Shown here: piece by piece, positions 24,902 to 62,979 of the stretch
Layout: each line of letters starts with the position of its first letter
How positions within the stretch are numbered: the stretch's first letter is position 1
Assembly: GCF_947568905.1 (NCBI RefSeq)
Contig: NC_079170.1
Location: 44,020,001-44,084,000 of the forward strand
From: Ostrea edulis
Taxonomy: Eukaryota
Reading direction: 5' to 3'
DNA: 64,000 nucleotides
Program-made: the position numbers and the translations under genes
Notes under the pieces: generated by a model
Seen by the model: only the letters and a program-made list of their open reading frames with translations
Databases searched by the model: none
What the model was told of the DNA's origin: nothing

Positions 24902-26036
24902 TCAGCGTTTACCTTGCAGCGCCCGCATGCTTTGAAGCTTTGCTGAGAAGCTCTTTGAAAAATGCTCTCTCGGTCGCCCGATGACGTTCGGCTGCCGGGT
25001 GGCTTGGTTGTAAGAAGGTGGATAGCCAGCCTGGGAACTCCTGGAACCGTTTATGCCATTCGTGAAATTTGGGGGCTGAAAACAGAATATTTCATTATAT
25101 AATATCTCCAATTAATATACCCAAAGTCATTACCGTTGAGTATTTTGAAAATGTTACGAAATGTTTCATCAGACAATACGCGATATTAGAATGCACTAAA
25201 CACTGATATGACAGGCACCCTCGGATCTATGTAAGACACTCCTGGTTGATCTGGCATGACAATCACTCGGTGGTGGTTCTTCCGCTTGCAGATTCTAATG
25301 TATACAAAGACCCCTATGAGTAGAAGAATGAAAAATCCCAACGAAGCCCCAACAACAATCCCACCTATCACAGAGCTGTAAAACAAATTCACAAAAAATA
25401 TCAATTACAAATATATAAACTCCAAATCAGGAGTCAATTACAAATAAATAAACTCCAAATCAGGAGTCAATTCTGAGGCTTTTAAGAGATAAAACCCCGG
25501 ATATTCCACTTGAAATGTGTTTATGATTTTGTGTATTTCTATTTTTATGAGACAAAAATTCAAGTACAGGCTATAGGATAATGAGAAAATTCAATTTCGG
25601 CATTGACATCCATTACTAAACAGCTGATTATCTCTGTAAATGAAAGGAAAACAATCTTACCTGCCACCGCTGCTGGAATTGGAGGAACTACTATATCGGT
25701 AATATGAGGACCTGTAGGAATAATAGTACCTATACCTCACACAGTGGACAGGGACACCACCTAAAAAGTATACGGATAACATTTAGTCAATAACATTACA
25801 CATCGTAAAATCCAGAATATTGAAATGAGTGTATGTAAAACTTATACGGTACCAATTTTGATGCACCAGATGCGCATTTCGACAAATAATGTCTCTTATA
25901 AATATGTGTTTATTTCTATATACAACCAAATAAACAGTCTTTGTTGAGAGAGATAATACTTACATCCTATTATAAATAATATCAAAGTAGAAAACCATAC
26001 AATTGTCTGTGTCTCGGAGCCCATTTTTATTGACAT
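24902..26036 (-). CDS. Paralogue A: CYYR1/Shisa-like small single-pass membrane protein with PPxY tail (~167 aa)
   Basis: Exons (-): 26036-25964 MSIKMGSETQTIVWFSTLILFIIG; 25760-25661 CGVPVHCVRYRYYYSYRSSYYRYSSSSNSSSGG; 25375-25219 SSVIGGIVVGASLGFFILLLIGVFVYIRICKRKNHHRVIVMPDQPGVSYIDPR; 25075-24902 PPNFTNGINGSRSSQAGYPPSYNQATRQ...QGKR-stop. Introns 1 and 2 have the same phases (1, 2) as in B-D. The exon-3 donor (AGG|GTGCCT) is weak and the 3' end is uncertain. Confidence 0.75.
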
Positions 26037-26147
26037 GAACTTCCAAAATGTACCTTAAAACCAAAACATCGATAGATATACTGGTAAATCGTATTTAAAA
26101 AATTGACACGGCATTTTAAATCCCTATTTCGCAACAGTTTTGCTGGA

Positions 26148-26159
26148 ATGAATATTCAT
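26148..26159. promoter_or_regulatory. ATGAATATTCAT palindrome (POU MORE-type site) upstream of gene A
   Basis: Exact copies also at 26993-27004, 33026-33037 (B), 51289-51300 (C) and 63164-63175 (D). Confidence 0.45.
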
Positions 26160-27379
26160 CCACTAATTCTATATTTAGGATAAGAACCTGAAACTTTTCC
26201 AATGCTTCTTTAAAAAATCCCCTTAATTCACATGTCTTTTATTATGCTGTTTATTGATCTGAGAAATTGCGTGATAATTGGAAGTGATTTGATTCAACAC
26301 ATGTAAAATGTAAACTATCATTTTGAAATGAATAGTCAGAAATCTGAAAAAAATGACTACATTATATTGCATTTAATGAAAACAATATTAGCGGGCATTT
26401 TGTTGTAAAATTGTGATTTACTATTGAAATGACAGATGAAATTGACGTTGATAAACTTTTGTTATTTATTAGAAAACCTATCCAGGGGTCTTAAGTGAAG
26501 CAAAATTAGATTATTGTTTTACTGAAGAAAAATTGATCTCTATATACTAGTAATGCTGTATATTCAATAGAACCAAAATCTTTATTTTGATAAAATCCTA
26601 AAGTTAGTTTTATTTTCATCAATGCCTTTGGTTAAGGTTACATACAAAACAACCATAATAGTATATTTTACAACATTGTTTTTCTCGATCGGATCTAGAG
26701 TTAAAATTGCATTAAATTTCAATGTTTTTGGTATTTCCCCCACATTTTTCATTTCGCCACAAAACGTTATGCAGATAGAGAATGTAAGCTCACAACTTTT
26801 TAATTAAATATTTTGATGAATAATTGCACAAATGTCATTTGATATTTTACTTTCTGGGGAAATGTAGATTTAGACTTCTGGAACTACCGCGACGATAAAA
26901 AGAAAATATAATATTATATGCGCATCGTGAATCAAGTACAATTTCAGTATCACATCACAGAAGCCACAACTGACTCCATTCTTTCATGCATGATGAATAT
27001 TCATTAGTTACACAAATAACTTTCCATTGTTGAATTCTATCTAGAGGGGTTACGGGGGTCGCCCCTTCTTTGAATATTGATGGGGATTTCCCTTCACATT
27101 TTACAAATGTATATACTACAATGTTTGAGCATATGAACATGAACTCATGATACAATTTAAGGTATTTAATGGATCGTTTAAACACCTCTTATGAAGTATG
27201 ATTTTACCCCCGAAAGAGTGATACAAGCTTTCAAGCATTTCATATGATTTTTTTTGTGATTGATCCCGGAATGATAAAAAAGGGTACTTTGTTTGCAAAT
27301 ACGGTTCTCTAGAGTCTAAATTTTCCTTTTGATTTGATGCTTATATGAATATTTGCCTAAGCGACTCAGATAGACGTTC

Positions 27380-27870
27380 TAATTTTGTAATTAAAAAAAT
27401 GAAAATTTAAAATGTTATTTGCTCATATTTTTTTAAAATATATGGATCATTTTTTTTAAAAAGATGTCAATTAGAAAAGAAGGTATGTCAGAGAAACATA
27501 TGTTTAAACTAGAAATTGAACTGAAATGGTCAAAATTCTGAAATATTAGGATTATTCAAATTGATAAAGGAAAATAATTTCTTGATGAACAGTACATACA
27601 GTTAGCAACAATATGAATATTTTCGTAATTTCTGTCAATTTTGATCGGGATCGGTACTTTTTTTTCTCGTTTGGATACAGTGGTTATATCTGAAATTTGA
27701 TCATTTCGTTTCAATTTCTTTATATGATATATTTCTTCGATATATCTCTTTTCTAACTGACATGAGTTTAGAAGATTTCATCGAGAGATTAAAAAATATT
27801 AAGAAATGTTTTCAATATTCATAAATATTTTTTCTAAAAAAAAAATTAAAACGTTTATATTTGTTAATAA
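27380..27870. repeat. Old degenerate fold-back (inverted repeat centred near 27620)
   Basis: AATTGAACTGAAATGGTCAAAATTCTGAAATA and GATGTCAATTAGAAAAG on the left have reverse-complement counterparts at 27685-27765. Confidence 0.5.

Positions 27871-28508: not shown

Positions 28509-28511
<3 letters not shown>

Positions 28512-28550
<39 letters not shown>
28512..28550. repeat. Poly(A) tract (39 nt)
   Basis: Direct reading. Confidence 0.95.
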
Positions 28551-28551
<1 letters not shown>

Positions 28552-31727: not shown

Positions 31728-32857
31728 TTAGTAGACATGATGCAACTCTTCTTCACCACGAATCGCGGGTTGTACCTGGATTGAAGGTGTGGAATGCAGT
31801 CGGGTTGAATTCGGGTCATGTTGACCAACAGTTAGACGTTGTGCTAAAAGAAAAATGTCGCTCACATTTATTGCTACGAATCCTTGTAAAAGAAATTAAT
31901 TGAAACTCATTTACTTTGATTAATTTGTAGATGTTGTATACTCTTTGATCAAATTTGTAGAGGTTGGATTTATAGCAACGAATGAAAAGCGCATTTATTA
32001 AATACCTGCATCGATGTAGGAGACAGGTGGTTGAGCTGGCTGGATAACCATTCGTCCGTGGTTTGTTTTCTTGCAGACTTTAACTATTATTATCGTCACT
32101 GAGCACATTAAGATAGCAAATCCAGCAATCCCGCCGACTATACCACCAGCCATTTTCCCTATTAATTTAACACTGCAAGAAAGGATTTCGAAAACGTCAT
32201 AAATCGTCCCCTGAACTCCAATGCACATATAAATCTTGATAAATATAGTACCGTTTTCCCGACAGAAATTAAGGCAACATATGAATATAGTAAACACATT
32301 TCAATTTGGAAAAACTTTTCATGAAACGCGAACATTCAAATGAAATTTAGTTCTTAACTGAATGATGGAAGGGTTTGACTAACAGGAAAAAGTTCAACAT
32401 TCCCTGCAATACATGTACATCAATGAAAATGTAAAAGCACAACTACATACCTATCATAATACTGGGTATTTCCGTAGTAAGAGCAGTAGTAGGAACGAGA
32501 ATAAGAGCAGTAACTACCACATCGAACCGGTACAAAACCTAAAAATTCAAATCACACAACAGAAATTAAATAGAAAAATAAGAATTAAAATCACACAACA
32601 GAATTTAAATGGAGAAAATTATCCCGCAAATATTTTTAAAATTTCTTTTTCAAAATAATTTTCACTAATTTAAAAATTCGAAGTATTTACTGAATGAACA
32701 ACATAATAACAAATTATAGTTATCACCATTGCTATGAATGAGGATGATGATGATGATGATGATGATGAAGATGAGGAGGAGGAGGATGCTTACAGCTAAT
32801 CACAGCCAACAATGTTATAGCGGAGATCCATCGTACATATACATTCTTGTTCTCCAT
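31728..32857 (-). CDS. Paralogue B: CYYR1/Shisa-like membrane protein truncated by an early TAA (144 aa; 224 aa if read through)
   Basis: Exons (-): 32857-32794 MENKNVYVRWISAITLLAVIS; 32538-32451 CFVPVRCGSYCSYSRSYYCSYYGNTQYYD; 32172-32006 SVKLIGKMAGGIVGGIAGFAILMCSVTIIIVKVCKKTNHGRMVIQPAQPPVSYIDA; 31843-31728 AQRLTVGQHDPNSTRLHSTPSIQVQPAIRGEEELHHVY-TAA. All GT-AG. The frame stays open for 79 more codons to the stop at 31488-31490. Could be a pseudogene or null allele. Confidence 0.78.
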
Positions 32858-44555: not shown

Positions 44556-44619
44556 ATGACTTGCGAGACCATGTACCTTGGCCCCCTAGATCAATGACTT
44601 GAAGCATTCATTATCAACA

Positions 44620-45800: not shown

Positions 45801-46019
45801 GGATAACAAATAGCCACGGTAAGCTACATCACTTAACGAGCAGGAAGCTCTCATAGGACTAAGACGCACCCTAAGTATGTCTTTGGAGACGTCTTAATCT
45901 TAAATCAGTTTCTTGAAGCTTTCCTAAACCAAGGTCTTGCCATAAGTTCGTCCTAACTTTTGGACAGCCTTACCATTGTCCTAATATCACCATAAGTTTG
46001 TATAAACATGGATGTAGTC

Positions 46020-46990
46020 TATATGTTGATGCAAAGAGCTCATAGATATCATACCATGAAATAATGTTTATCTAATGTGTTTCATACCCATTGCCAGACC
46101 GTTTCTGCACACTGATTTTGACTGCGGATAACTTCGTTATAGTATAAGACATTGACAACTTGCTACAGTCCTTGAATTTCTCCAGTTGAAGAATTCTGGT
46201 TCCTCTTCCTACTCATGATAATACACCAATGAGCACATTGACAAATCAAATTCAGATTGGGTTAACTTGTGTTGGACAGTGGCATTGCGTTTCTAATTGG
46301 TTTTGCATTGTATTCATTGTAAAAAAGAATATTATATAATAGCATTTGAAACACACTTGCATGGGTTCAAGTATCAGAATATTCGTTCACTTTTTAAAAT
46401 TCATCCTAAGAAAAGTGAAAATGACGAGCCGTGATGAATCTCATAACTCCTATAAGCAGTACAAAATAGAGAGTTTGGCAAACACAAACCCCAGGATAAA
46501 CCAGAGGTGGGGTCAGATAGCTAGAAGGAGTAAGCATATTTGTCGACCGGTCACACCCACCGTGAGCCCTTTATCTTGATGAGGTAAACCGACTTATCTG
46601 TAGTCAAAATCAGTGTACCAAGAACGGCCTACATGTAACAATTGATATGAAACACGTCAGATAGCGTTTGGTCCATTGATAGGTTGCATTGACAAACTAG
46701 ATCGTTATGACGGCCATGAAATTTGCGAAATGCTGATTTTAAACGAGAGTGTTGAAACACTTGACTCTTTGTAATTAACCACTTGATGAAAGGTGAAGAT
46801 AATGAACAGTGATAAATCTGATAACTCCTACAAGCAAAACAAAATAGATAGTTGCGCAAACACGGACCCCTGGACACACCAGAGGTGGGATCAGGTGCAT
46901 AGGAAGAGTAAGCATCCCCTGTCGACCGGTCACACCCGCCGTGAACCCTATATCCTGTTCAGATACAACACGTAGAATACTCCACAGAAT
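46020..46990 (-). mobile_element. Penelope-like retroelement 3' fragments, copy 1
   Basis: LITKSQVFQHSRLKSAFRKFHGRHNDLVCQCNLS (C-terminus of mollusc Penelope-like RT) plus repeated tails. Confidence 0.7.
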
Positions 46991-47515
46991 GTCATACCGG
47001 TATTTTTTTTACAAGTTGAATGATACCAACTCAAAAGTTAGGGAATATGGATCAGAACCACCCACACCCCACTCTCTAAGATGAAAATACACTTTCAGTA
47101 GACATAATCTATCCATATTGCGTGAAGTTAGAAACCAAAATAAAGAAAAATAAAATGAAATTGAATAAAAAGGAAATCCCGCTAAGTTGATAGGCAACAA
47201 AACAAACAAAATATCAAACAAATACGTATAGATATTTTATTTACTGACATTAGAATTGAAGTTAGTTTATTTTCAAAATTGAATCCATCCACGAACCAAA
47301 CGTAAATTATTAGATTTTATTAATACAGAATGAAGGTATTGTTTCTATAATATCTATTAATTCGTAATATATTTATTTTTAGGAATGTGATTACACAAAG
47401 AAATCGATTAAAGTTGTCATTGCTAAAATATCTTCGAAAATCTAGCGGCGTATTGATACCTGGTGTCATTTATGTATATCATGAGAATCTCAAAATAGTG
47501 CAATAACATATATTT

Positions 47516-48149
47516 ATTATACCTCAGTATGAGAATTCTATGCAACGCGTAATCTGATTGGTCTAGACGGTCACATGCCAGGGATGACAAAACTTCATAT
47601 CTCCCTCTCAAACATCATATTTCCCTATAATATTTACCCCCTGGGCAGCCTCGTGTATTTTCCATAAATTTAACGTCAAGGTAGACGAAGGGTATTGTGA
47701 CGTCACAATAAGTCCGAGTCATTCTATTTTCATAGTTCGTAAGGCACAAAATATGCGGGTCTCTGATACACAGTTGAATGCATGGTTTTAGTTGATACAA
47801 AAACAAGCAAGTAAATCGGCATTCAAGGAGAATGGAAATACAAAAACTGGTTATCACTTCACTGTATTTCGTTGTTTGTACCTTCTACCGTAATACGTTG
47901 ATGGCACGGTGCTACCGTTAGAACGATCTCAGCTATATAGATGAGCGGACTCCAATTTCAAATGCACTTTTGAGTCTTGCTTTGTTTCGGTATAATAAAC
48001 AATTTATTGCATGAATGTTCGGGAGATATGAAGATTTATTCACCCAAGAAAAATCATATTCCCCTCAGGCGTTGCCCTCGGGGAATATGATTTTTCTTGG
48101 GTGAATAAATCTTCATATCTCCCTCACTATCATGCAATAAATGTATAAT
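47516..48149. mobile_element. Fold-back non-autonomous DNA element present in one duplication unit only
   Basis: Termini ATTATAC...GTATAAT; perfect 44-bp stem 48021-48064/48080-48123; absent at the homologous site near 59555. Confidence 0.75.
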
Positions 48150-49585
48150 GTAAAAGAGGAAACCCAAGAGTTGACAGAATTTCACGCCCCGATACTTGCT
48201 CATTCGTTATGTTGCCAATGGGAATATTTTTTGCGATTTCTCCTTTCTTATAAAGTGATAGTATATATTTTCAAGACAAGGATGTGTTCTTGATTGCATG
48301 GAAAATGAATGCTCGATATAGACAACGTTTAATTACACAATCATGTCATGAATGATCTGAAATTATAATTCCAAGAATTCATTTTCATTCTGAAAACTGC
48401 GTAATTTATTAATACAAGCTACTCAAAACAGTAGTTTAATTAGTAATTGTTGATCACACATGGGACCTAGATAATTAATTCATATGGTTATATATTGAAT
48501 AAATGCAGTACTCATACCCGATCAGGGATTTTCAAGGATTTACCCCGAGTTGTAGTTCATCAGTGTAATACATTTATATCACGTTTTTAAAACGATGAAC
48601 TAGTCTCATGTACATAAAACATCAAATTCAATGAATTTAGACAAGATGCGACAGATTAGCAGAAAGGAAATTCCAGCATTTGAGTGTTTGTCTGGAATTT
48701 GTTTCAAATGGAAAAATGTAGAATTGAAATAATGCATATTATACCTAATCAAAAGCAAATTCATCGACATAAACACAATAAGATTCAACATCGTGTTTAC
48801 ACAGTGGTGGTATAGGAGAAGTAAAATACATCCAATTCTGAAACTGTATGTGTATACAATCGAAACACGCTCTCGAAACCTGCAAAATGGTAAATAAACT
48901 GATCGTTTTCATTATAAATCATTGTTGTTTGAAATATCGAAATATTGGAAATATTGGAACTATACACCCTACTCTACAATGGTTCCTGGTTCTATTTTAA
49001 TTCTTTCGCCCCTCCTCTTATAGAAACGTTTTAAAAGGTTTGTTTAAAATTGCATGCAATTAATTCGGGAATCTAGAATGCACCTCACATCTTTTCAATT
49101 CAATATCTAGAAACTAGTCGAATGACAACTACTCGGGTCTTCTCAGCAAGCTCAGGGAAGGTGTTGTGACTGTATCACGTTCACCGCAAGCATATTATAT
49201 AGAACGTTTGTGCAAAATGGATACTTCCAGTCACATTGTAATAAGATTTTCTTAAACTGAAAATGGGGATATCTCATCGTTTCTAGCATACATTTATTGT
49301 AAAAAAAAAGGACCGTAAATATTTCCATAGTGGTAGTTTGATTTGATATAAAAATGGAAACTAACATAATTTATTCGAAGTTGTTTTCCGCTTGCCGGAA
49401 AGACCCAAGAATATGCGAGTGGGAACTTCTCTTGTCTGAAAGATGGAGTTGAGCTAATGGCCATCTTTTAACATCATTTTAGATATGTATTACTCCGGAG
49501 ATTTTTTCCTTGATTTTTCAGATTACATTTAGATGTGTCCCTTGGGGAGTGTTGGTTGCCATTAACTGTGGTGTGAGGTCAGTTC

Positions 49586-51113
49586 TTAGTTGGAAAGTAT
49601 TAATTGTCCTGGGGTTTGAAGTGAGATCTCTCCGTGACTGGGAGATGTGGTCTGTCCATGGTTTGTAAATATGGCTTGTCCTTGATTTTGAGGAGAAATC
49701 TCCTCTTGAGTGGGAGATGTAATCTGTCCTTGTTGGGCAGGTGAGGGCTGTCCTTGGTAGAAATGATGCAACTCTTCTTGACCATGAAGCACTGGTTGTA
49801 CCTGGATTGAAGGTGTGTGATTTAGTCGGGTTGAATTTGGGTAATGTTGACCAGCGGCCAAACGTTGTCCTTCAGATTCACTAGATGTGTTTTGTGCTGA
49901 AAGAAAAATGTTCTTCACATTTATTGCTATGAATTTGTAAAAAAAAAATTACCTTGAGAATCATTTTCTTTGATCAAATTTGTAAATGTTGTATATTCTT
50001 CAAATAAACAATTCATTTTTTATAGATGGTGTGTTCATAGCAAGGAATCATAAGCGCATTGAATACCTGTGTTGATGTGAAAGACAGGCGGTTGAGCTGG
50101 GTGGACAATCGTTCGTTCGTGGTTTGTTTTCTTGCAGACTTTAACTATCATTATTGTCATTGAGCACATGAAGATAGCAAGTCCAGCAACCCCGCCGACT
50201 ACACCACCAACTATTTTTCCTATGAATTCAACACTGCAAGAAAGTGTTTTGAAAAGCGGTCATGAACCGTTCTCTAAACTCGACCCAGAATGAAAATTAA
50301 TTACGGGTTACGTTCTGCATTACCAGATTTAAGTAAATGATACCTGAATGTGAGTTGAATGTATAATCTAGTACACAATATCTATATTTCCAATGCTTTT
50401 ACCTTCGATATCATTATCAATTAAAGTGACAGCCGTTTTCATATGTGTGCGTATGGATCTTGATACATATACTATGAGATTTTAACGGTTGAGAATTCCA
50501 ACAGAAATTAAAGCAAACTGTACATGAAAAAAAGAATTCTGACAATACTTGAGAGTATGAACAGCAATGCTTCACCAGCATACGTTTTATGAAGCGCTAA
50601 TCCGTAAATGACATTTATTTCTTAAACGAATGAAATTATGACTAACACGAAAACAAATCCCAGCATTCCCTGCAATACATGTACATGCATACTAGTAAAG
50701 GTGTAAAACAACAACTACTTACTGATCATAATAATGATGGGTATCGGCGTAGTAAAAGCAATAGTAGTAACCAGAAGAATAATAACAGTAACTACCACAT
50801 CGAACTGGAACAAGACCTAAAAATTTAAATCATCAACAGAAATTAATGTAAAAAATATCACACAATTCTTTATTTTTTTTTTTTTGAAAGATAATTTTAA
50901 TTTAGAAATTCAAAGTATTGTCCGAATGAACCCCATAATAACAAAATACTGTTATCATCATTGTTATTCATGATGAGGATGATGATTATGATAATGATGA
51001 AAATGATGAGGATAAAGATTATATTGATGATGATGATGCTTACAGCCGATCACAATAAAGAATGTCATAGCGGAGATCCATCGTACATATAAATCCTTGT
51101 TCTCCGTCGCCAT
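49586..51113 (-). CDS. Paralogue C: CYYR1/Shisa-like single-pass membrane protein with octapeptide-repeat tail (213 aa)
   Basis: Exons (-): 51113-51044 MATENKDLYVRWISAMTFFIVIG; 50816-50723 CLVPVRCGSYCYYSSGYYYCFYYADTHHYYD; 50233-50067 HVEFIGKIVGGVVGGVAGLAIFMCSMTIMIVKVCKKTNHERTIVHPAQPPVFHINT; 49896-49586 AQNTSSESEGQRLAAGQHY...PGQLILSN-stop. GT-AG introns, phases 1/2/1, intact ORF. Confidence 0.85.
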
Positions 51114-52819
51114 TCTTATCAAAAGAACAAATTTAAAAAATGTCCCTTAGTTTCTTATGACCGAGAATCTTCGTCTTTGTACAGACATGTGGTAAAGCTA
51201 CAGGAGAAGACGTTTTATGCACGTACATTTAGCTACCGTATTTTGATTGATATTGAGATAAATATCCCCATTGGTGTAAATGTAGGTAATGAATATTCAT
51301 ATTACCTATATTATTGTCTTCGCAAAAATAAACTCTGAAAGGTTTTAAAGCATCCCAGACTTAGAATTGTCGGTCTGCTGAATTTCATCACATATTGCTT
51401 GTGTCCATTTTCAGAATTGGATGATGCATTAAGCAAGATTTAATTAAAGGTTGACTTTGATTCTGGGGGCATATTATACAAGCTTAACCTTGTTTGAGTC
51501 AGCTTACGCATTATAAAAACGCGTAAACTGGCCCAAACCATGTTTTACTCGTACAATATGCCCTGAATTAAAGTAAGTCATTATAATTTATTACAAAAGA
51601 CAAAAGCAATAATCTTCTTTTATTAAAATGTACATGAAGTTTGAAAAACACAAGTCACTTGAGCCGCACAATGACTCACGTCCATGTAGCAACCACGACG
51701 AAACGTCTAGCTGTAATGACAATCATCTTAGTTCTACCGACCCTATTTATCAAAATTGTAAGCGAGTTGTGAATTTATCATGCCAGAGAGTATGTGTAGA
51801 CTATGTATGCAATGCGTATTTTGTTATCCTTTAAAGATTGACTTTTTAGTCGCTCATCTCCGACAGATTGAGAAATTATGGAAAATTGTATTCTTTAAGT
51901 TTACCGAAAATAAGTCTTCACATATAAGAAAACACAATGATTTTCGGCTTTCAATTCTATGAAAATATCTAAATGAAAACTTACTATTGCATGCAACATT
52001 GTCGCTAATAGTAAATACGACACAAGAAAATATCTATAACCAAGTGGAAAATCGCCATGTATATGACATCATATGATACAATGTGACACTTGATTTTTTG
52101 GCGGATCAAGCAATAAACAAATTCTCCCAGTTTCCTTAGTGAGAAATGTTTTTCAAAATGTTACGGGCAATGGTTGCATGGTGGATAATTAATTCGAATA
52201 TACTATCTTTGATTTAATTATTTATTCCACCATCATACAGAGAAAGATGTTTTAAAACTGTGAATTGCGTACAAGTAGATTATATACATCTTGCTTGACA
52301 ACGGGAAAACAATCTGTGTAACAGACCTAAGTATATTTTTGTACACCTTGACTTTCTATTCCATAGAAGACTGAGAACGGTGCTGTGATGTCAATATTGA
52401 TAAAAAATTCCAATAATTACAAAGATATGTTATGTTTACTATGTTCAAAATTTATAATATTCCATCATCTTTCATGTCACGACTGCATGTTTATCAAAGT
52501 CATGCAAATATACAGTTAATCATTTTCAATACATTAACACTGTGTCAAAGGCAAAACAGTTTTACTATAGCGACGGATAATAATTGGAAATTTCTCTTTC
52601 ATTTTTTCATATTTTCGTCTTATTGATGATGTCTGATGACAAAAATAATAACCTTTTTATTCAACATAATTTTCAAAATATTATTACTAATAATTGGAAT
52701 TTAAACAAAATAATCTAAATTCTCAAATGTGTCGTAAGTTACATGTACGTGCTAGTTAGTATGCAACCCTGTTTCAATGGAAATACAGATTGTGCATATC
52801 CTGCAATGTTTCAAAAACC

Positions 52820-53380
52820 AGACACACTCCATAACACATTCGCCCGGAAATCCCGAAACCTTCTTGATTTTCAAGATATTCCAAGAACCTCACACGATTC
52901 AACGTCGTATTTTGACTCCTCGGTAAATTGATAGACTCCCTAAAGTTTAAAGTGTTATACCCCATGGACGTTGCTATTTGAATTTTGGAAGTACCCCTGA
53001 TGACCTGGCGTTGCTCTCTGTTCTACAGAACATGCAAATACACTTTGATTTTGATTGTCCACTCATGTTTTACAAAATAAAAACTTTATTTTTCCATTTG
53101 AATGATAAGAAAGCAATGGGTGATGACATTGTCTAAAGAGAATGGTTTGAACTGTGACATGTCCACAATGTTGTGACAAGTCCTGAAAGTGTTCCGTGGG
53201 TTCCCCCGGATTGGGAAAATACTTGTTTGTCGATGTATACAGATTGGTAAAGTCGTAATACTCTATGGTTTCGTCTTCTGAGTCTTTGTACTGTAATTTA
53301 ATAGTATTAGTTAGATCACTGGAAAAACCTGGAAAGGCGTTTTTAATTGAGAAGAAAACATCGTATGAATTTTTTCGCAA
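52820..53380 (-). pseudogene. Polinton/Maverick DNA polymerase B fossil, motif A region, copy 2 (segmental duplicate)
   Basis: TNTIKLQYKDSEDETIEYYDFTNLY...HPLLSYHSNGKIKF; KIKKVSGFPGECV. Confidence 0.88.
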
Positions 53381-54423
53381 CAAAATATGAGTGAAAAACC
53401 CTCTAGCGGTACGTTAAACAATATACAACAAAGCATCAACTCCAATTTGTAACCATCAACACCAATTCATAAAAATGACGAGGAAAAAAGGAATAGGCTC
53501 CATCATAAGACAAAGGAAATAATTCATATCACTGGGAATAGTTTGGGCGAATATAAAATAGTTATCATTGTTGTGAGAAAATCTAGAAATGATCGCAGAG
53601 TCAAATCAATTACCCAAATGATTGACAAAGAACTAGAGCCACTAAGTACCAAAATTGACTCTTTTGCCAAAATAAGTGAGACTTTCGCAGTTGATGCTTT
53701 AAGTGTGATAGGTTATATAACAGTTTATTTTATAACAATATCTTTTCTAGTTTTCGTTTTACAGTCGTTTAAACTTTGTTGTATTTCAGCGTGAAAACTA
53801 TATAACGTCATGATGCTAACGTTATGAGAATTAATGCATACAAATGGGCGCATAGATTAAAGATACTTTTGGATTTATTCTTGTTGTAAATTACAACTGT
53901 TAAATTCTTAAAATATTAGGAAGTTCTATATTTTCTATGATGCTCATATTTGAGATAGATTTGCTCTTTCCTACATAACACTAAACAAAGTTTGCCCACT
54001 GTATTAATTGCATCATTTTAGAACAAAAGGTAGTGTAATTAAGAATATTTAATTATATGACACTTAAATTAGAATTATCAATCATTGCATAATGCATTCA
54101 ACTTTGCATTATACAAAATTTGCATGATCAAGAGAGAGACTTTACCACATCACTAGAAAAGTTAGCTCACTAGCGAGGCAGTAAAAGTTCCCCATTTACT
54201 ATCTGCTGCCCAAATTTTTAAATATGTGGATGAAAAATGCATTCAGTCCTTTATTCATTTTACTTTTATAGACATAAAAAGTAGTCTTCATTTTCATCAT
54301 TCATTTAAACAAAGTTTATAGTAAGTGGCCTCAAATGAACCAAAACCAAAACGTATCTTTCAAATTCTCAAAAATTCTCAACAATTAAGCAATTTTATGA
54401 TGTGCCAAAGTTAATTAATAAGC

Positions 54424-54574
54424 AAGGTATCATTTTAAAATATTTATCGGAATATAAATACGGATTGGTCACTGATCAAATTCCATAAAGCCTGAAGGGC
54501 TATATGGAAAATTTGATCACGTACCAATCCGTATTTACATGTATATTCCTATAAATGTTTTAAAATTATACCTT
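54424..54574. repeat. ~70-bp-arm imperfect hairpin (fold-back MITE end)
   Basis: AAGGTAT-CATTTTAAAA...TACGGATTGG...GATCAAATTCCATA-AAGCC pairs with GGGC-TATATGGAAAATTTGATC...CCAATCCGTA...TTTTAAAAT-TATACCTT. Confidence 0.75.
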
Positions 54575-56899
54575 ATTACTTATATTTTTGATCGGTAACA
54601 TTGCTGAATTGTGTTAACAACATGTTTCCATAAATTTCACATTGTTGACCTGCACAACGAAGCATCATGTATGTTCAAAATGACGAAAACACAAAACAAA
54701 GTTTCATGAAATGAAGAACTGTTTTAATTATTAAGACGTTAAAAAGCAAGTATATCAACATATACATTAACTAAGGAGTATGAAACGCGAAGACTTCCTA
54801 GGCACCCGATTCCATCCCTGGTGTGTCCAGGGGTCCGTGTTTGCCCAACTATCTACTTTGTATTTCTTATAGGATTTATGAGATTGATAACTGTTCGTTA
54901 TATTCATGGCTAATTTTAGGGGGGAGGGGTATGATTTAAACGGGGGTACGCAAGGTTACACTTACAGTTTTGATGCGCTTTCACTTTTGAAAAGTGAAGA
55001 TGTTGAAGACCGACTTAGTAAGATATTATGTGGATATTACAAAGTTAACAGGAGACTGAGGTGGAGGAACATGAAGAACAGGGTGACCGTCGTCAGGTGT
55101 AGGCAAATCTTTTATAGACAGGACAAAAGAACGCAGCTCTGATGAATCTCCAGAAAGAACTGTACATCGCAGAAAATGTGGAAGTGCACCAAGGTTAGGG
55201 ACGGTTTGGTTTTTTTTCAATATATAATTGTAGACAAACATGAACTCACTGAACGCTTCTTTTGACTCGATAACTTTTTGTAAAAGATTTTTAACGACGC
55301 CTCGCTTCAATGTCCCGACATAAACTTGGAAACCGACTTCAATAATTTTATGGCTGCTGTGGCTCGGAGGCAGCGCGGTGTGTAGGTCGTAATGGACTTT
55401 GAAGACTTATCGGCCATACATCCTGTGATTGAACGTTTTGCTAAAGCCTTATGTCATCGTCTAGCAGAAGCTACAATTCCGCATCAACGATGACCAGGGT
55501 GAAGTTGTAGCAGACATCATTTTAGACATACATTAGTAACTAAAGACATTGTTTACAGAAATGCTTTTATGAATTATTGATGAAAGTCCACTGCTTGGAA
55601 TACAATTAAAACCATAAATACATTTTGTGATTTTGATTCATCTATTGATAGACTTCTGTAGTAAGTTAGAGCGATTGCTAGATGTGTATTGCCTTAGTAA
55701 AAGTAATACTTGTTACCTACTGTTAACAAATGTTCATACGCACTGCCATGACCTCTGTTGACCGCGTAGTGGATTTATGTAGTGCTTAATACGTATTGCT
55801 CGTATTAGTGTTATATAGGAGAATACAGTTGAAAATGATGATAATAATTATGATGTAATGGTGTTCTATAATAGATTTTACTTGATATTGAATTGATTCC
55901 TTCCAAACATACTTTAACTAAATATTATCATAAAATTACAAGTATTCATTTAATATGTACGTTTGAATAAATGAAATAAGTATATTATTCCCCCCTCCCC
56001 CCAAAGCATTGTTGTAAGTAATAATAAAGCTTGAAAAGGTATTTCCTTAATAATATTTCTAAAAGAAGTATGTTGTACATATTTCTTTTTGTCACAGAAT
56101 AGAAAACCAAATGCCAGTTTAAATAAACACGACAGTGACTTAGATCTCTAACATTTTCGTTTAACTTAAAATGAAAAATAGAAATAGTGCTCACAGCTCG
56201 CCCTAAAATATTTTTGCAAATATGGGCAAATTAAAAGGTGTACATTATAAAAATACTTTGAATATTTAGGGCGAGATGAAACTAGTATGGCAAAAACTTT
56301 GAAAAATAACTAGTTTATGGTGAAAACAAATGACGAAAATACAGTACCATATCCGGTTCTAGTATGTATACAGCTTTAATTGTGCCCATAATTTCAATAT
56401 CTAACATGTATTTGTAAACTCCGGATTCTGATACGTATTTATGACACCTATACTCTTATTCAACATTTACTTTTATTTCTATATATTTTAAGGGCCATAT
56501 GTTGGGGTTAAGTTCCTTGTTTCGCCTTCTAAATTATGACATATTGCTAAATGGTTTTCAAAAATAAAGAAACAAAACTCTCCTTCCCATTCTTAAAATC
56601 TTAGTATGACAAACTTCTCATATACCGAATAAAGCATGGACCAGTTTAAAAAAAACTTAGGAAAAAGGGATGCTTCTTAAACTGTTGGTTTAAATGAATG
56701 AATAAAGACGTTTTTGTTACTTAATTATCCGCATTATTTTTTCACTATTTTACATTGGAGTGAATTACCTTACAATCAACGAAAAAATTCCAATATGTAA
56801 AGGTGGTTGTAAGTGGTAAGTTCTTTTGTAAAACGAACCCACGACTTACGAGAACATGTACCTTGTCCTTCAGATCAAATACTTGAAGCATTCATTATC

Positions 56900-58050
56900 A
56901 TTGAGAAAAAAGTCCTATATCAATCAAGTATATTGAACGCATATAAAACGCCTGGTGCTGATGGTACAAGTCCTTGAATTTTACAAGCAACATGCCCATC
57001 TGTTTACAAACCAACAAAACTAATCATTACACCCTTTAAAAGACAACCGTCTTCACATATTTGGAAACAAAGCACATATAAACTAAATCTCCTATTTTTG
57101 AAAATAAAGAGCCCCCTAATCATAACAAGCCATTATCCTTGACACCAGATGTTTATAAATATTCTAAAGATATCTATTTAATTTTGTTATTGATAACAAT
57201 TTGTCTGAATTTTAATCAGTGTTTTTTTATATATTAATACAAAATAATATCAAATCTTGACAAACGCAAGGATTTGTGGCATATCCAAATCATTTGATAT
57301 AATGTGGCGTAAAGGTCAAATACATAAACGTAAAAAAAAAATGGTATATTGGGCAATATGTTAGACTGCATTGAAAATTATTTAAATGATAAACAACAGA
57401 AACTTTATATTGAGGGATTCTCAAATACCTTTAAAAGTATTGATGCGAGGGTCAGTTATGTATAAAAGAGCATGCAAACCCAGCACTCCAAATTCATTCT
57501 GACAGCAACTGGTCTAATCCTAATACACCTATACAAGGCAAAAACCCACTGATTGTATTTTATATTGATTTTGTTCAACTTGTTTTAGAGTATGGTGTTA
57601 TTGTACCGGGCAGATGCACATAGGAATATACATAATTATTAGAAAAAACTTCCAGTATAACCATTGGTCTAAGGGTGAATTCTTCTATAACAGCTTTTTA
57701 TAATAAATTGGATTGAGAAACATTATCTTCCAGATGGGCTAAATATTAATTATCTCATTATACAAAATCATAAATGGCTTGGTACTGAATGAGTGAATTT
57801 TTTTTAGATCCCTTTTCTCTAGTTCAAAATTCCTACAATTGTTTGAAAGGTAATCCCCTTCATCCATTGCGCACAACAAGGCCATACTATAATAGCTTCA
57901 TCCCATCGACAGTATCAAATTATGAAGTTCACAGTGCAGATATGAAACATTTATCATCTTTCTCAATATCTAAATCAAAACTAAAGCTTGCAATACCAAC
58001 ATGCCAACAATATTCCACGCAATGTCGTAGGATAGAAAGCATCCACTGTC
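56900..58050 (+). mobile_element. Decayed CR1/L2-type LINE reverse transcriptase, copy 2 (segmental duplicate)
   Basis: Collinear with 44620-45800; ICGISKSFDIMWRKG and VLEYGVIV remnants. Confidence 0.8.
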
Positions 58051-58219
58051 AGCTAAATCTTTAAACCAACAGGAAGCTATGGTAGGACTAAGACGAGCCC
58101 TAAGCATGTTTTTGGAGACGTCTTAGTCTTAAATCAGTTTCCTGAAGCTATTCTAAACTAGGGTCTCGCCATAAATTCGTCCTTTGGAGCAATTTAACTA
58201 TTGTCCTGATATCACCATA

Positions 58220-58980
58220 CGTTTTTAAGATCATGGCGGTAGTCTTTATGTTGATGCAAAGAGCTCACATATACCATGAAATAATATTTATCTGACATGT
58301 TTCATACCGATTGTTCGACAGTTTTTGCACACTTATTTTGACGACGGATAACTCCGTTATAATATAATTCATTTAGAGACATTGACAACTTTCTACATTA
58401 CTTAAGTTTATCCAGTTGAAAATTTGGTTCCTCTTCTTACTCACGATGATGCACTAATAAGCATATTCACAAATCAAATTCATATTGTTTTGACTTGTGT
58501 TGGATATGATATTGATATTGCGTTTGTAAGTGGTTTTCCATTGTATTCATTGTAAAAAGAACATTATATAATAGCATATGAAACACACTTGCATGAGTTC
58601 GAGTATAACAATATTCGTTAATTATTTAACATTTATCTTACGAAAGATGAAGATAACGATAGTGATCAATTTCATAACTGCTATAAGCAATACAAATTAC
58701 AGAGTTTGGCAAACACAGACCCCAGGATCAACCAGAGGTGGGGTCAAACCGCTAGAAGGAATAAGCATATCTGTCGAACGGTCACATCCACCGTGAGCCC
58801 TTTTTTTTTTGATCAGATAAACCGAGTTATCTGTAGTCAAAATCAGTGAGCCAAAACGGCCTACATGTAACAATCAATATGAAAACGTCAGATAGCAGTT
58901 GACCCATTGATAGGTTATATTGGCAAACTAGATTGCGAAATGCTGAGTTTAAACGAGACTGTTGTCGCGATTGACTCTCT
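58220..58980 (-). mobile_element. Penelope-like retroelement fragments, copy 2 (segmental duplicate)
   Basis: Collinear with 46020-46760. Confidence 0.68.
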
Positions 58981-60854
58981 ATTATTAACTACATGTACTT
59001 GGTACAACACGAAGAATACTTCTCACAATGTCATACCGGTATTTTATCACAAGTTAAATGATTCCAACTCAAACGTTAACGAATATGGATCGGAACCACT
59101 CCCACCCCCTCTCTAAGATGAAAATACACTTTCAGTAGACATAATCTATCCATTATCTAGTGTTAGAAACGAAAATAAAAAAAAAAATGAAATAAGATTG
59201 AATAAAAAGAAAATTCCGCTAATTTGACACACATCAAAACAAACAAAATATCAAACAAATACATATAGATATTTTATTTATTGACATTATAATTGAAGTT
59301 AGTTTATTTTCAAAATGGAATCCATCCATGAACCAAACTTGATTTATTAAATTGTATTAATACAGGATGAAGGTAAATGCATTGTTTATATAATATCTAT
59401 TACTTCGTATTATATTTGTCATTGGGAATGTGATTACACATATAAATCGATTAAAGTTGGCATTTCTAACGTATCTTTGAAAATCTAGTGGCGTATTGAT
59501 AACTGGTGTCATTTATGTATATCATGAAAATCACAAAATAGTGCAATAACATATATATGTAAAAGAGGAAACACCAGAGTGGACAGGAGTTTACGCCCCG
59601 ATAGTTGTTCATTCGATATGATACCAATGGGAATATTTTTTTGGGATTTTTCTTTATCAAATGATAGTAAATATTTTCCAGACAAGGATGTTTTCTTGAT
59701 TGCATGGGAAATAAATAATGAATTTAAACAACTGTTATTTACACAACTAGGTCATGAATAGTCTGAAATCAGGATTCTAAGAATTCATTTTCATCTTTAA
59801 AACTGTGCATAATTTATGAATACAATCAACTCAAAACAGCAGTTTAATTAGTAATCGTCGATCACACATGGAACTTTGATAACTAATTCCTAAGGTTATA
59901 TAATGTATATTGAATAAATGCGTTATCCAGGCTCGTTCAGGGATTTACAAAGATTTACTCCGAGTTTTATGTCATCGGTGTTTTACGTATATATCATGTT
60001 ATAAAATGATGAACCAGTGTCATTTAGATAAAACATTATCAAATACAATGAATTTAGAAAAGATGCAATACATAAGCAGAAAGCAAATTCCAGCATGTGC
60101 GTATTTGTCTGCTATTAGTTTCAAATGGGAACTATTGAAATGAAATTATGTCTGTCATATCTTATCAAAAGCAAACCCATCAACATAATTTGTTTACACA
60201 GTGCTGGTAATGTAAAAGTACAATGCATGCAATTCTGAAATTGTATGTGTATACCTTCGAAACACGCTCTCGAAAACTGCAGAATGGTAAATGAATTTAT
60301 CGTTTTCAATCTAAATCATTTGCACTTTTGAAATATCGAAATATAGGAACTATACATCCTACACTGCAATGGTTGCTGGTTACATTTCAATTCTTTTACT
60401 CCTTTCCATGTCAACATGTTTTAAAAGGTGTGTTTAAAATTGCAAGCAATTAATTCTGGAACCTAAAATGCACCTCACAATTTTTTAATTCAATATCTAA
60501 GAACTACTCCAACGGTAACTCCTCGGCTCCTTCCAGCAAGCTCAGGAAGGATGTTTTGACTGTATTATGCTCACCGCAAGTACATTGTGTAGAACATTTG
60601 TACAAAATGGATGCTTCCAGTCACATTGTAATAAGATTTTCTTTAACTGAAAATGGGGATATCCCATCGTTTCTAGTATACATTTATCGTAAAAAAAAAA
60701 CCGATATTAAACATTTTCATAGTCTTATGTTGATTTGATATAAAAATGGAAACAATCATAATTTATTCGAGGTTGTTTTCTGAGAGTGTGGGATGGGAAC
60801 TGGTCTTGTCTGAAAGATGGAGTGAAGGTAAGGACCATCTGTTAACATCATAAC

Positions 60855-61385
60855 TACATACTCGCAGTTTTATCTGATACAAGTTTAAAATGTGTATTTA
60901 TTTCCATTCATTAGAGTTAAACTAATAAATTATCAAAAGACAGACATAGGTCATCACAATTTTTAAAATGTGATACTTACTTAAACAGAATCATGTATCA
61001 CCGTCAGAAATTTGCACTTTTCCTTAAACAGCGTAATAAAAATTCCATACAAACTGGTTATGACGATATAATAGCATTCATAAAAATCTCATAAAACTAT
61101 ATTTTCATAAAAATATACAAAATGTCTATAAAAAATAAAGGAAATTTATTGTATTATATACTTGATAAAGAAATCAATAAAAACAAAGTTATTGCCCTTG
61201 TATTCAATATTTTGAAACGTATCATTGATTATTCATCTATAACTTAGACTTTTGAAATATTTTATGTTTAACAAGATTTTTTTTACAATAACTATAGGAA
61301 GAGACTCCAAAAAAAATTATATTCCTATCATGCATAAATCTAGATAAATCATTGATTTTGCAAAATCATGACATCACAGGAGAGT
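60855..61385. mobile_element. Insertion downstream of the gene D stop codon, absent from the gene C unit
   Basis: Flanks are collinear with 49470-49500; the interior is homologous to 34500-34750. Confidence 0.55.
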
Positions 61386-61485
61386 GGAATTACTTTAAGA
61401 GGTTTTCCTTGATGTTTTAAAATCACATTTAGATATGTCCCTTGGAAAGGTTTGGTTGTCATTAACTGTGGTGTGAGGTCTGTTC

Positions 61486-62343
61486 TTAGTTGGCAAGTAT
61501 TAATTCTCTTTGATTTTGAAGTAAGGTCTCTCCGTGATTGGGAGATGTGGTATGTCCATGGTTTGTAAATGTGAGTTGTCCTTGATCTTGAGGTGAGATA
61601 TCCCCTTGACTGGGAAATGTGGTCTGTACTTGGTTGACAGGTGAGGGCTGTCCTTGGCAGAAATGATGCAACTCTTCCTGGCCATGAATCACGGGTTGTA
61701 CCTGGATTGAAGGTGTGTGATGTAGTCGGGTTGAATTCGGGTCATGTTGACAAGCAGCCAAACGTTGTCCTTCAGATTCACCAGATGTATTTTGTGCTGA
61801 AAGAAAAATGTCCCAAACATTTATTGCTAGGAACTTGTATAAAATACATTGAGAATCATTTTCTTTGATCCAATTTGTTGATGCTGTATATTCTTCAAAT
61901 AATCAAATTGTAGATATTGTACTTATAGCAACGAATCATAAGCGCATTATACCTGTGTTGATGTGGAAGACAGGCGGTTGAGCCGGGTGGACAATCGTTC
62001 GTTCGTGGTTTGTTTTCTTGCAGACTTTAACTATCATTATCGTCATTGAGCACATGAAGATAGCAAGTCCAGCCACCCCACCGACTACACCACCAACTAT
62101 TCTTCCTATGAATTCAACACTGTAAGAAAATGTTTTGATAAGATTTCATGAATCGTCCTCAAAACTCGACCCAGAATGATATGTTTCGCGTTACTATATT
62201 TAAGTTAAAGATACCTAAATGTGAGTTGAATGTAGAATATGTTATAAAATATTCAAATTTCCAATTCTTTTCCCTTTTATATCTTTATCAATGGTGAACT
62301 GATAGCCGTTTTCATATGAACGTGAACAATGGGTGTATGGATC

Positions 62344-62388
<45 letters not shown>

Positions 62389-62979
62389 TGACATTTTAGC
62401 AATATTTTAGTTTCTGACAATACATCAGAGTACGACCAGCAATGCTCCGCGCCAGGATAATTTTCATGAAAATAAAGTCTATTTCTTAAATGTATGAATA
62501 AAATGTTTTGTGTCTAATACGAAAACAAATCCCAGCATTCCCTGCAATATATATACATGTATATCAATAAAGATGTAAAACAACAACTACTTACTGATTG
62601 TAATAATACTGGGTATCGGCGTAGTAATAGCAATAGTAGTAACTAGAATACGAAACACAGTTACTACCACATCGGACTGGAACAAAACCTAAATCATAAA
62701 CAGACATTAAATGGAGAAAACATCCCACAATTTTTAAAATGATTTTTCAGGCTAATTTTTATTTTAAAATTCGGAGTATTTACCAAATTAACAACATTAT
62801 AACAAAATGTAGTTTTCACTATTGCAATTAATGATGATGAAGATGATGGTTATTATGATTATGAAATGGTGAGGATGAGGATTATATTGATGATGGTGAT
62901 GGTGATCATGCTTACAGTTGATCACAACAAACAATGTTATAACGGAGATCCATCGTGCAGATAAATCCTTGTTCTCCAT
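61486..62979 (-). CDS. Paralogue D: CYYR1/Shisa-like single-pass membrane protein with octapeptide-repeat tail (211 aa)
   Basis: Exons (-): 62979-62916 MENKDLSARWISVITLFVVIN; 62688-62595 CFVPVRCGSNCVSYSSYYYCYYYADTQYYYN; 62119-61953 HVEFIGRIVGGVVGGVAGLAIFMCSMTIMIVKVCKKTNHERTIVHPAQPPVFHINT; 61796-61486 AQNTSGESEGQRLAACQHD...QRELILAN-stop. GT-AG introns, phases 1/2/1, intact ORF. Confidence 0.85.
62347..62385. repeat. (AT)n microsatellite in gene D intron 2
   Basis: Direct reading. Confidence 0.95.

What the first reader, a model, noticed from the sequence alone, without database searches (positions are those of the whole stretch)
24902..62979. Unannotated tandem family of micro-receptors with hypervariable Cys/Tyr/Ser ectodomains on a conserved TM scaffold
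Seen: four paralogues share a signal / ectodomain / TM / tail exon layout. The mature ectodomain is only ~30 aa: A CGVPVHCVRYRYYYSYRSSYYRYSSSS; B CFVPVRCGSYCSYSRSYYCSYYGNTQYYD; C CLVPVRCGSYCYYSSGYYYCFYYADTHHYYD; D CFVPVRCGSNCVSYSSYYYCYYYADTQYYYN. Counted by hand, C versus D differ by 14/94 nt in the ectodomain exon (10 aa changes, 2 clearly synonymous) but by 6/167 nt in the TM exon (1 aa change, 5 synonymous). The four Cys are fixed in B-D. The TM carries GxxxGxxxG and a juxtamembrane CKK/CKR. Known: this architecture matches CYYR1/Shisa-like proteins; Tyr/Ser/Gly-rich loops dominate antibody paratopes; GxxxG drives TM oligomerisation. Inference: a lineage-specific, diversifying family of small disulfide-knotted recognition or adaptor proteins, possibly in innate immunity or allorecognition. 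Relaxed constraint cannot be excluded, because non-coding divergence between the units looks similar in size.
Basis: partly seen in the sequence, partly recalled or inferred. Interest (0 to 1): 0.82.

Follow-up and report, generated by a model that had tools for sequence, protein, structure and literature searches.

The report
Oyster CYYR1-like membrane adaptor gene cluster
Four neighbouring flat-oyster genes encode small single-pass membrane proteins that are divergent, lineage-specific copies of the known CYYR1/Shisa-like adaptor family, and their variable outer stub drifts at the neutral rate with no sign of selection for diversity.

Summary
The sequence observation holds. Four minus-strand, four-exon genes (A-D) have canonical splice sites, and the peptides and hand counts are exactly as reported (14/94 and 6/167 nt).

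The window is Ostrea edulis OX387710.1, about 44.02-44.08 Mb. My models of A, B and D equal RefSeq "uncharacterized LOC" proteins residue for residue, so only C appears unannotated. One spliced contig in a public run joins D's exons 1-3 at the predicted GT..AG sites.

The proteins are divergent members of a bivalve CYYR1-like / "shisa-5-like" family:
- A profile of the TM exon alone finds oyster relatives.
- Some of those relatives reach Pfam CYYR1 (PF10873).
- hhalign of the window proteins against PF10873-positive bivalve proteins gives 97.9% probability, E 3.8e-13.
- B, C and D form an Ostrea-only clade.

"Hypervariable" is not supported. C-D ectodomain divergence (14.9%) is no higher than intron divergence (13.5-21%). 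Ectodomain dN/dS is 0.83, 0.43 and 0.28 in the three pairs. No ecto-exon variant was listed in three DNA runs.

Only the TM/juxtamembrane exon is constrained (dN/dS 0.06). The first two "ectodomain" Cys probably lie in the signal peptide. Only A keeps a PPxY motif, and B's tail is cut by a nonsense codon.

Verdict: new members of a known kind, of modest interest.

The parts
24902..26036 (-). Gene A (RefSeq LOC125655863, 167 aa; 163 aa from the ATG at 26024). Exons: 25964-26024/26036, 25661-25760 (R/Y/S-rich ecto, no Cys after VPVHC), 25219-25375 (TM + CKR), 24902-25075 (tail with PPSY, stop included).
   Evidence: equals P0002 apart from the MSIK extension; gene range
31728..32857 (-). Gene B (RefSeq LOC125653689, 144 aa). 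Exons: 32794-32857, 32451-32538 (88 nt ecto), 32006-32172 (TM), 31728-31843 (short tail ended by TAA where C and D have CAA).
   Evidence: equals P0001
31490..31727 (-). Former tail coding sequence of B behind its nonsense codon. It is still an open QGQ-rich repeat frame homologous to the C and D tails.
   Evidence: tblastn of C and D aligns down to 31491
49586..51113 (-). Gene C (213 aa, intact ORF, canonical splice sites; not found in the protein collection). Exons: 51044-51113, 50723-50816, 50067-50233, 49586-49896.
   Evidence: absent
61486..62979 (-). Gene D (RefSeq LOC125653685, 211 aa). Exons: 62916-62979, 62595-62688, 61953-62119, 61486-61796.
   Evidence: A spliced contig in run X1 joins 63078-62914 | 62686-62595 | 62119-62014
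61369..63078 (-). Extent of D-like transcript contigs in run X1: 5' UTR up to 63078, tail exon and 3' UTR down to 61369.
   Evidence: table 8, records 5 and 6
43578..63937 (.). Two tandem duplication units of about 10 kb (about 43.6-52.7 kb and 52.9-63.9 kb) that carry C and D. Identity of the aligned blocks, exons included, is 76-87%.

Best explanation
A-D are tandem, lineage-specific paralogues of the bivalve CYYR1-like family. [quoted passage not shown] The family belongs to the STMC6/Shisa-like group of small type I membrane adaptors.

Each protein has these parts:
- An N-terminal signal peptide that probably runs through C-x-VPV-x-C.
- A 22-28 aa Tyr/Ser-rich, low-complexity extracellular or lumenal stub.
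- A glycine-zipper TM helix.
- A conserved juxtamembrane block, C-K-[KR]-x-N-H-x-R..V.P.QP.V..I.
- A disordered tail.

By analogy with human CYYR1, the ancestral mode of action is recruitment of NEDD4-family HECT E3 ligases through cytoplasmic PPxY motifs on endosomal membranes. Gene A keeps one PPSY and may still work this way. The B/C/D clade has lost all PPxY motifs and carries Q/S/T/P-rich repeat tails.

In the recent C/D pair, selection acts only on the TM plus juxtamembrane exon and on keeping the reading frame open. Whatever B-D do is therefore most likely done through TM-helix association, with each other, with PY-bearing paralogues or with partner membrane proteins. Ectodomain recognition is unlikely to be the mechanism. 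The ectodomain differences are drift within a Tyr-codon-neighbour composition (Y, C, S, F, H, N and D are one base apart).

Shown: gene structure, homology, splicing, the constraint pattern. Inferred: signal cleavage site, E3 recruitment, TM oligomerisation.
For: Gene models are identical to RefSeq proteins, and a spliced contig has exact GT..AG joints.

Homology:
- A TM-exon profile built only from window sequence hits oyster proteins P0003 (5e-15), P0011 (1e-9) and P0018 (3e-7) in 1.8 billion representatives.
- Relatives score on Pfam PF10873 CYYR1: P0046 35.4 bits and P0037 31.3 bits (cut-off 31), P0034 28.1, P0011 26.8.
- hhalign of the window proteins against PF10873-positive bivalve proteins gives probability 97.9%, E 3.8e-13 over 105 columns.
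- The nearest Atlas clusters are mollusc CYYR1-like, shisa-5-like and chordate CYYR1.
- The 55-codon TM exon is also a separate exon in the PPPY-bearing paralogue P0018.

Constraint (C versus D):
- TM exon dN/dS 0.06 (p=0.003 against neutral). Ecto 0.83 and tail 0.81, neither different from neutral.
- No indel in exons 2-4 (572 nt) against 19 gap blocks in 811 aligned intron nt. By my own Poisson estimate about 13 would be expected.

Structure: helices at residues 4-23 and 53-89, everything else at low confidence.

PPxY occurs only in A. Human CYYR1 binds WWP1, WWP2 and ITCH through PPxY motifs at late endosomes (PMC11399591).
Against: The window proteins themselves give no Pfam CYYR1 hit. The link runs through intermediate bivalve sequences, and a Tyr-rich plus TM composition can inflate profile scores.

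No vertebrate CYYR1 sequence was compared directly. B-D lack the PPxY motifs through which human CYYR1 binds WWP1 (PMC11399591), and the six-Cys pattern of STMC6 is absent.

B versus C/D shows TM-exon dN/dS of about 1.2, so constraint on that exon is not uniform. RNA evidence is one pair of contigs from a run whose RNA status is a guess. Those contigs are only 91-96% identical to D, so they come from another allele, copy or species. Logan holds no full-length 90%-identical protein for A, B or D.
Confidence: 0.75

Rival explanations
1. One reading: a diversifying family of disulfide-knotted micro-receptors whose Tyr/Ser/Cys ectodomain is a recognition surface under positive selection, acting in innate immunity or allorecognition.
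For: Ten of about 31 ectodomain residues differ between C and D, against one of 55 in the TM exon. The Fisher contrast of N/S, ecto (11,3) against TM (1,5), gives p=0.018. The signal exon shows 8N:0S. The expansion is tandem and lineage-specific.
Against: Ectodomain dN/dS is 0.83, 0.43 and 0.28, never above 1. Ecto divergence is no higher than intron divergence. The contrast with the TM exon comes from constraint on the TM exon; the ectodomain is not accelerated.

No ecto-exon variant is listed for three DNA runs. The ectodomain is low-complexity and has no confident fold. Two of the four Cys likely belong to the signal peptide, and A has none. No expression or immune data exist.
Confidence: 0.07
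2. B, C and D are young duplicates under relaxed constraint and are on the way to pseudogenisation. Only shared ancestry and recent duplication make them look like a family with a conserved scaffold.
For: dN/dS is about 0.8 in the ecto and tail exons. B's tail is cut by a CAA-to-TAA change. All PPxY motifs are lost. C is not annotated. Logan contigs encode no full-length 90%-identical protein for A, B or D.
Against: The C/D TM exon has dN/dS 0.06 with normal dS (0.14), which indicates purifying selection and argues against gene conversion. Exons 2-4 have no frame-breaking indel, while introns carry 19 gap blocks. All 24 splice sites are canonical. A spliced D-like transcript exists.
Confidence: 0.15
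3. The Tyr-rich stubs are substrates for cross-linking or modification (DOPA, sulfation), or are shed peptides used in adhesion or shell-matrix chemistry. On this view the proteins are not signalling adaptors.
For: The only support is extreme Tyr content (8-10 Tyr in about 30 residues), together with general knowledge that bivalve adhesive and periostracal proteins are Tyr/DOPA-rich.
Against: Membrane anchoring and the conserved cytoplasmic juxtamembrane block and PPxY motifs across the family point to a membrane adaptor. No repeat architecture typical of matrix proteins is present. No tissue data exist.
Confidence: 0.03

Closest known systems
[quoted passage not shown]
   Same: Signal peptide, very short Cys/Tyr-rich ectodomain, single glycine-rich TM helix, basic juxtamembrane Cys block and disordered tail. 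Homology to PF10873-positive bivalve proteins is supported by hhalign (97.9%). The signal/ecto/TM/tail exon layout is shared with a PPPY-bearing O. edulis paralogue.
   Different: The window proteins do not reach PF10873 themselves. B-D have no PPxY motif and A has one, whereas human CYYR1 has three (PMC11399591). The tails of B-D are Q/S/T-rich repeats. The ectodomain has 0-2 Cys after the likely cleavage site.
STMC6 / Shisa-like transmembrane adaptors (Shisa, WBP1, WBP1L, VOPP1, TMEM92; Pei and Grishin 2012, as cited in PMC6125347 and PMC11399591)
   Same: Small type I single-pass proteins with a Cys-containing N-terminal stub and, in most family members, a Pro-rich, PY-bearing tail. NCBI names several oyster relatives 'shisa-5-like'. 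Atlas neighbours include WBP-1, VOPP1 and Shisa5 clusters.
   Different: The six conserved cysteines that define STMC6 are absent. No hit to Shisa_N or WBP-1 Pfam models appears in any scan.
Other PPxY membrane adaptors of NEDD4-family ligases (NDFIP1/2, ARRDCs)
   Same: A functional analogy only, and only for A and for PY-bearing family members: PPxY-mediated recruitment of HECT E3s to endosomal membranes (PMC11399591 discussion).
   Different: No sequence relationship was tested or expected. NDFIPs are multi-pass proteins.

Membership tests
CYYR1 (PF10873) | Score at or above the Pfam gathering threshold (31 bits) | tested here: not met
   P0001 (B), P0002 (A) and P0030 (D) give no CYYR1 hit at E up to 1-10, and single exons give none. 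Bivalve relatives do: P0046 35.4 and P0037 31.3 bits, with others at 25-28 bits.
CYYR1 (PF10873) | Profile-level homology to family members | tested here: met
   hhalign A4 (A, B, D) against A5 (PF10873-positive bivalve proteins): probability 97.9%, E 3.8e-13, 105 columns covering signal, ecto, TM and juxtamembrane. The TM-exon profile hits P0011 and P0013, which carry sub-threshold PF10873 matches. No vertebrate CYYR1 was available for a direct test.
CYYR1 (PF10873) | Architecture: signal peptide, short Cys/Tyr-rich ectodomain, one TM helix | tested here: met
   Two hydrophobic peaks. AlphaFold helices at 4-23 and 53-89. 8-10 Tyr in the stub.
CYYR1 (PF10873) | Multiple cytoplasmic PPxY motifs that bind WW domains (three in human CYYR1, PMC11399591) | tested here: not met
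   A motif scan finds PPSY only in A and none in B, C or D. In the family alignment B-D have VQP[VA]I at the conserved PPxY column. Binding itself cannot be tested here.
STMC6 / Shisa-like superfamily | Six conserved cysteines in the N-terminal domain | tested here: not met
   B-D have four Cys before the TM helix, two of which are probably in the signal peptide. A has two, both in the putative signal peptide.
Shisa (PF13908 Shisa_N) and WBP-1 (PF11669) | Match to the family HMM | tested here: not met
   Neither model appears in any hmmscan of window proteins or relatives.
Diversifying immune or allorecognition receptor families (generic) | Ectodomain dN/dS above 1, or ectodomain divergence above the neutral (intron) level | tested here: not met
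   dN/dS is 0.83, 0.43 and 0.28. Ecto divergence is 14.9% against 13.5-21% in introns. The sample is small: three paralogues.

The most novel reading that the evidence does not exclude
The Ostrea-specific B/C/D clade is a neo-functionalised, PY-less branch of the CYYR1-like family. Only the glycine-zipper TM helix and the CKKTNH juxtamembrane block are under selection. These proteins would act as TM-level modulators, for example as dominant-negative or sorting partners of PY-bearing CYYR1-like adaptors or of another membrane receptor. The freely evolving Tyr-rich stub and Q-rich repeat tail would tune partner choice. A weaker version is that ectodomain diversification is real but undetectable with three sequences.
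Probability: 0.15. Interest if true: 0.5.

Novelty: new member of a known kind. Interest (0 to 1): 0.25.

Why it matters
CYYR1 had no assigned function until 2024, when it was shown to regulate the E3 ligase WWP1 (PMC11399591). Nothing was found in the literature searched on its invertebrate relatives.

This locus shows three things about oysters:
- They carry a tandemly expanding CYYR1-like cluster.
- One young clade has shed the PPxY motifs while keeping the TM/juxtamembrane module.
- The striking Tyr/Cys/Ser variability of the ectodomain is what neutral drift in a low-complexity stub looks like.

The third point is a useful caution for scans that flag 'hypervariable' small receptors. The locus gives a natural series (one PY in A, none in B-D, a truncated tail in B) for asking which part of a CYYR1-type adaptor is essential. 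It is not a new kind of system.

Tried and rejected
Shorter motifs found all four.
- Pfam on single exons gave nothing meaningful.
- tblastn with A's tail found no PPSY-type tail in B-D. Their tails are a different, Q-rich exon found by tblastx.
- Two RNA-run searches found no run on record as RNA that holds the loci. Only one 'RNA?' run with a 5% word share proved useful once reads were laid.
- Two word-indexed profile searches did not reach vertebrate CYYR1, so no direct comparison was possible.
- Gene conversion as the cause of TM-exon similarity was rejected: dS there (0.14) equals dS elsewhere.
- Assigning the X1 transcript to C was rejected: it matches C at only 13 of the 35 listed differences from D.
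- AlphaFold gave a low-confidence model (mean pLDDT 56), so no fold search was run.
- The look-up of encoding contigs found no record for isoform P0018. Isoform P0024 placed that gene at 8.3 Mb.
- A literature search for CYYR1 in oysters returned nothing.
- An earlier scan note on a different Cys-rich receptor cluster 28 Mb away was not used.
Full report
**1. What is in the sequence**

The four ectodomain peptides are on the minus strand.

The TM exons carry G-xxx-G-xxx-G-xxx-G and CKK (B-D) or CKR (A). All exon boundaries are canonical AG/GT.

The tail exon of B-D was found by tblastx. It starts at cag|CACAA and is in phase with the TM exon. It encodes a Q/S/T/P-rich repeat tail of about 103 residues in C and D. 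In B a CAA-to-TAA change ends the protein after 38 tail residues, although the repeat frame stays open behind it.

A has a different tail exon, with one PPSY.

| Gene | Protein length | Window coordinates |
|---|---|---|
| A | 163 aa (167 in RefSeq) | 24902-26036 |
| B | 144 aa | 31728-32857 |
| C | 213 aa | 49586-51113 |
| D | 211 aa | 61486-62979 |

No further copy lies in the window. C and D sit on two tandem units of about 10 kb whose aligned blocks are 76-87% identical.

**2. Where it comes from and whether it is annotated**

A profile of the four TM exons, built from window sequence only (A1), was searched against 1.84 billion representatives. It returned 22 proteins.

The top two are B and A themselves: RefSeq XP_056000500.1 (LOC125653689) and XP_056000499.1 (LOC125655863) of Ostrea edulis. 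D is the product of LOC125653685. My hand models equal these proteins residue for residue.

The locus coordinates place the window at about 44,020,001-44,084,000 of OX387710.1. C did not appear in either word-indexed search, although it shares a 98%-identical TM exon with D. It therefore seems to be unannotated in that collection.

Two more relatives lie on the same strand at 43.896 Mb and 43.846 Mb. A PPPY-rich relative lies at 8.34 Mb on the same chromosome.

**3. Transcription**

No run on record as RNA holds the loci. When reads were laid on D, run X1 (kind 'RNA?', a different organism code) gave a 363-nt contig. It joins three pieces:
- 63078-62914
- 62686-62595
- 62119-62014

The skipped parts end in CT..AC on the plus strand, which is GT..AG on the gene's strand. 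These are exactly introns 1 and 2 of the model. None of the three DNA runs shows these joints.

A second X1 contig covers the tail exon and 3' UTR (61369-61707). The contigs are 91-96% identical to D and are not C. They come from another allele, copy or closely related species. This is spliced-transcript evidence for the gene structure, but it is thin.

In another oyster data set a relative is encoded as an uninterrupted ORF on a 957-nt Logan contig, that is, an mRNA.

**4. Family**

The window proteins hit no Pfam family. Their oyster and mussel relatives do score on PF10873 (CYYR1), whose cut-off is 31 bits:

| Protein | Score (bits) |
|---|---|
| P0046 (Mytilus 'CYYR1-like') | 35.4 |
| P0037 | 31.3 |
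| P0034 | 28.1 |
| P0011 | 26.8 |
| P0048 | 26.0 |
| P0031 | 24.9 |

hhalign of A/B/D against four PF10873-positive bivalve proteins gives probability 97.9%, E 3.8e-13 over 105 columns, running from the signal peptide to the juxtamembrane block. The nearest language-model clusters are mollusc CYYR1-like (0.88), shisa-5-like, chordate CYYR1 (0.84), WBP-1, VOPP1 and Shisa5. These are leads only.

The family alignment shows four features:
- A conserved P-V-x-C followed by A/G/S.
- Two 'YC' positions in a Tyr run.
- The glycine zipper, with the block K-x-C-K-K-x-N-H-G-x-V-x-V-x-P-x-x-P-x-V.
- A PPxY column in most members. A keeps it, while B-D have VQP[VA]I there.

A tree of 28 proteins puts B, C and D in a 100/99-supported clade on a long stem, with no orthologue from other oysters. 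A is a long branch near Saccostrea cluster genes. The 55-codon TM exon is also a separate exon in the PPPY-bearing paralogue.

**5. Is the ectodomain hypervariable?**

No. For C versus D the mismatch rates are as follows:

| Region | Mismatch |
|---|---|
| upstream 500 nt | 21.8% |
| intron 1 | 21.0% |
| ecto exon | 14.9% |
| intron 2 | 19.0% |
| TM exon | 3.6% |
| intron 3 | 13.5% |
| tail CDS | 12.2% |

Nei-Gojobori dN/dS for C versus D:

| Exon | dN/dS | Counts |
|---|---|---|
| ecto | 0.83 | 11N, 3S |
| TM | 0.06 | 1N, 5S |
| tail | 0.81 | 28N, 10S |
| signal | undefined | 8N, 0S |

Ecto dN/dS is 0.43 for B versus C and 0.28 for B versus D.

Against neutral expectation only the TM exon deviates (p=0.003). 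The ecto exon gives p=0.74. TM-exon dS (0.14) equals dS elsewhere, so the TM exon's similarity reflects purifying selection and is not due to gene conversion.

The genes as a whole are not decaying. Exons 2-4 have no indel over 572 nt, while introns have 19 gap blocks in 811 aligned nt. By my own Poisson estimate about 13 indels would be expected in the exons.

The DNA contigs of three runs list no variant in D's ecto exon. The X1 transcript differs at 3/92 ecto positions and 3/106 TM positions.

The variable residues (Y, C, S, F, H, N, D) are all one base from a Tyr codon. This fits drift under a compositional constraint.

**6. Topology**

The N-terminal hydrophobic peak runs through C-F-V-P-V, and AlphaFold puts a helix at residues 4-23. 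The family-wide P-V-x-C followed by A/G/S fits the (-3,-1) rule for signal peptidase, which is established knowledge.

I therefore infer, with about 70% confidence, that cleavage falls after VPVxC. The mature stub would then have two Cys in B-D and none in A.

AlphaFold gives no confident fold for residues 27-52 (pLDDT below 50). It gives a confident TM helix at 53-89 and a disordered tail. 'Disulfide-knotted' is not supported.

**7. Mechanism**

Human CYYR1 has a signal peptide, a Cys-rich stub, a TM helix and three PPxY motifs. It sits on Rab7 late endosomes, binds the WW domains of WWP1, WWP2 and ITCH through the PPxY motifs, and drives WWP1 autoubiquitination and lysosomal degradation (PMC11399591). 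It is grouped with WBP1, WBP1L, VOPP1 and TMEM92 as STMC6 proteins, which are defined by a single TM helix, six conserved Cys and a Pro-rich tail (PMC6125347).

A, with one PPSY, may still recruit such ligases (inference). B-D cannot do so through canonical PY motifs. What selection preserves in C and D is the glycine-zipper helix and the juxtamembrane block. The most likely activity is therefore association within the membrane, possibly with PY-bearing paralogues (inference).

**8. Verdict**

The defining PY and six-Cys features are not met by these copies. The 'diversifying micro-receptor' reading is not supported. These are new, divergent members of a known but little-studied family, and three of the four are already in RefSeq.

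**Limits**
- No SignalP run and no codeml analysis.
- No population sample.
- No direct comparison with vertebrate CYYR1.
- RNA evidence comes from a single run.

Noticed in passing
window 31490-31730: B's tail is ended by a single CAA-to-TAA change. Behind it about 80 codons of QGQ-rich repeat, with a 48-nt periodicity (self-hit 31553-31658 against 31601-31706), remain open. This suggests a recent truncation that could be polymorphic.
   Followed up: partly
window 61302-61400: A high-copy repeat lies directly downstream of D's 3' UTR. Summed contig depth in the DNA runs is in the thousands to hundreds of thousands, against 7-75 nearby, with many loose ends. It is probably a MITE or other transposable-element fragment.
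   Followed up: no
window 62520-62864: Run X2 has a 384-nt contig that matches 62520-62648 with 13 differences and then jumps to 62864. A divergent extra copy or a structural haplotype of the D region may exist in that individual.
   Followed up: no
OX387710.1 43,845,367-43,847,431 and 43,895,984-43,896,815 (L006, L003): Two further CYYR1-like genes (LOC125655619, LOC125656234) lie on the same strand about 175 and 124 kb before the window. The cluster is therefore larger than the finding. Saccostrea echinata has adjacent LOC133194526 and LOC133194528 on one contig.
   Followed up: partly
window 12251-14187: Three tandem arrays (12251-12620, 12713-13033, 13234-14187; 87-93% identical copies) appear in the self-BLAST. 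The first two overlap arrays that other first-reader notes (s1-292164, s1-292238) place beside an ATG7 exon.
   Followed up: no
window 36467-38330: Two more tandem arrays (36598-37039 and 37435-38330) lie between B and C. ORFs are open in several frames on both strands, as is typical of satellite-like repeats.
   Followed up: no
L005 (OX387710.1 8.33-8.36 Mb): The PPPY-rich paralogue LOC125653711 spans about 10.6 kb and sits next to a PAN/fibrinogen-C gene. It keeps the same 55-codon TM exon as A-D.
   Followed up: partly
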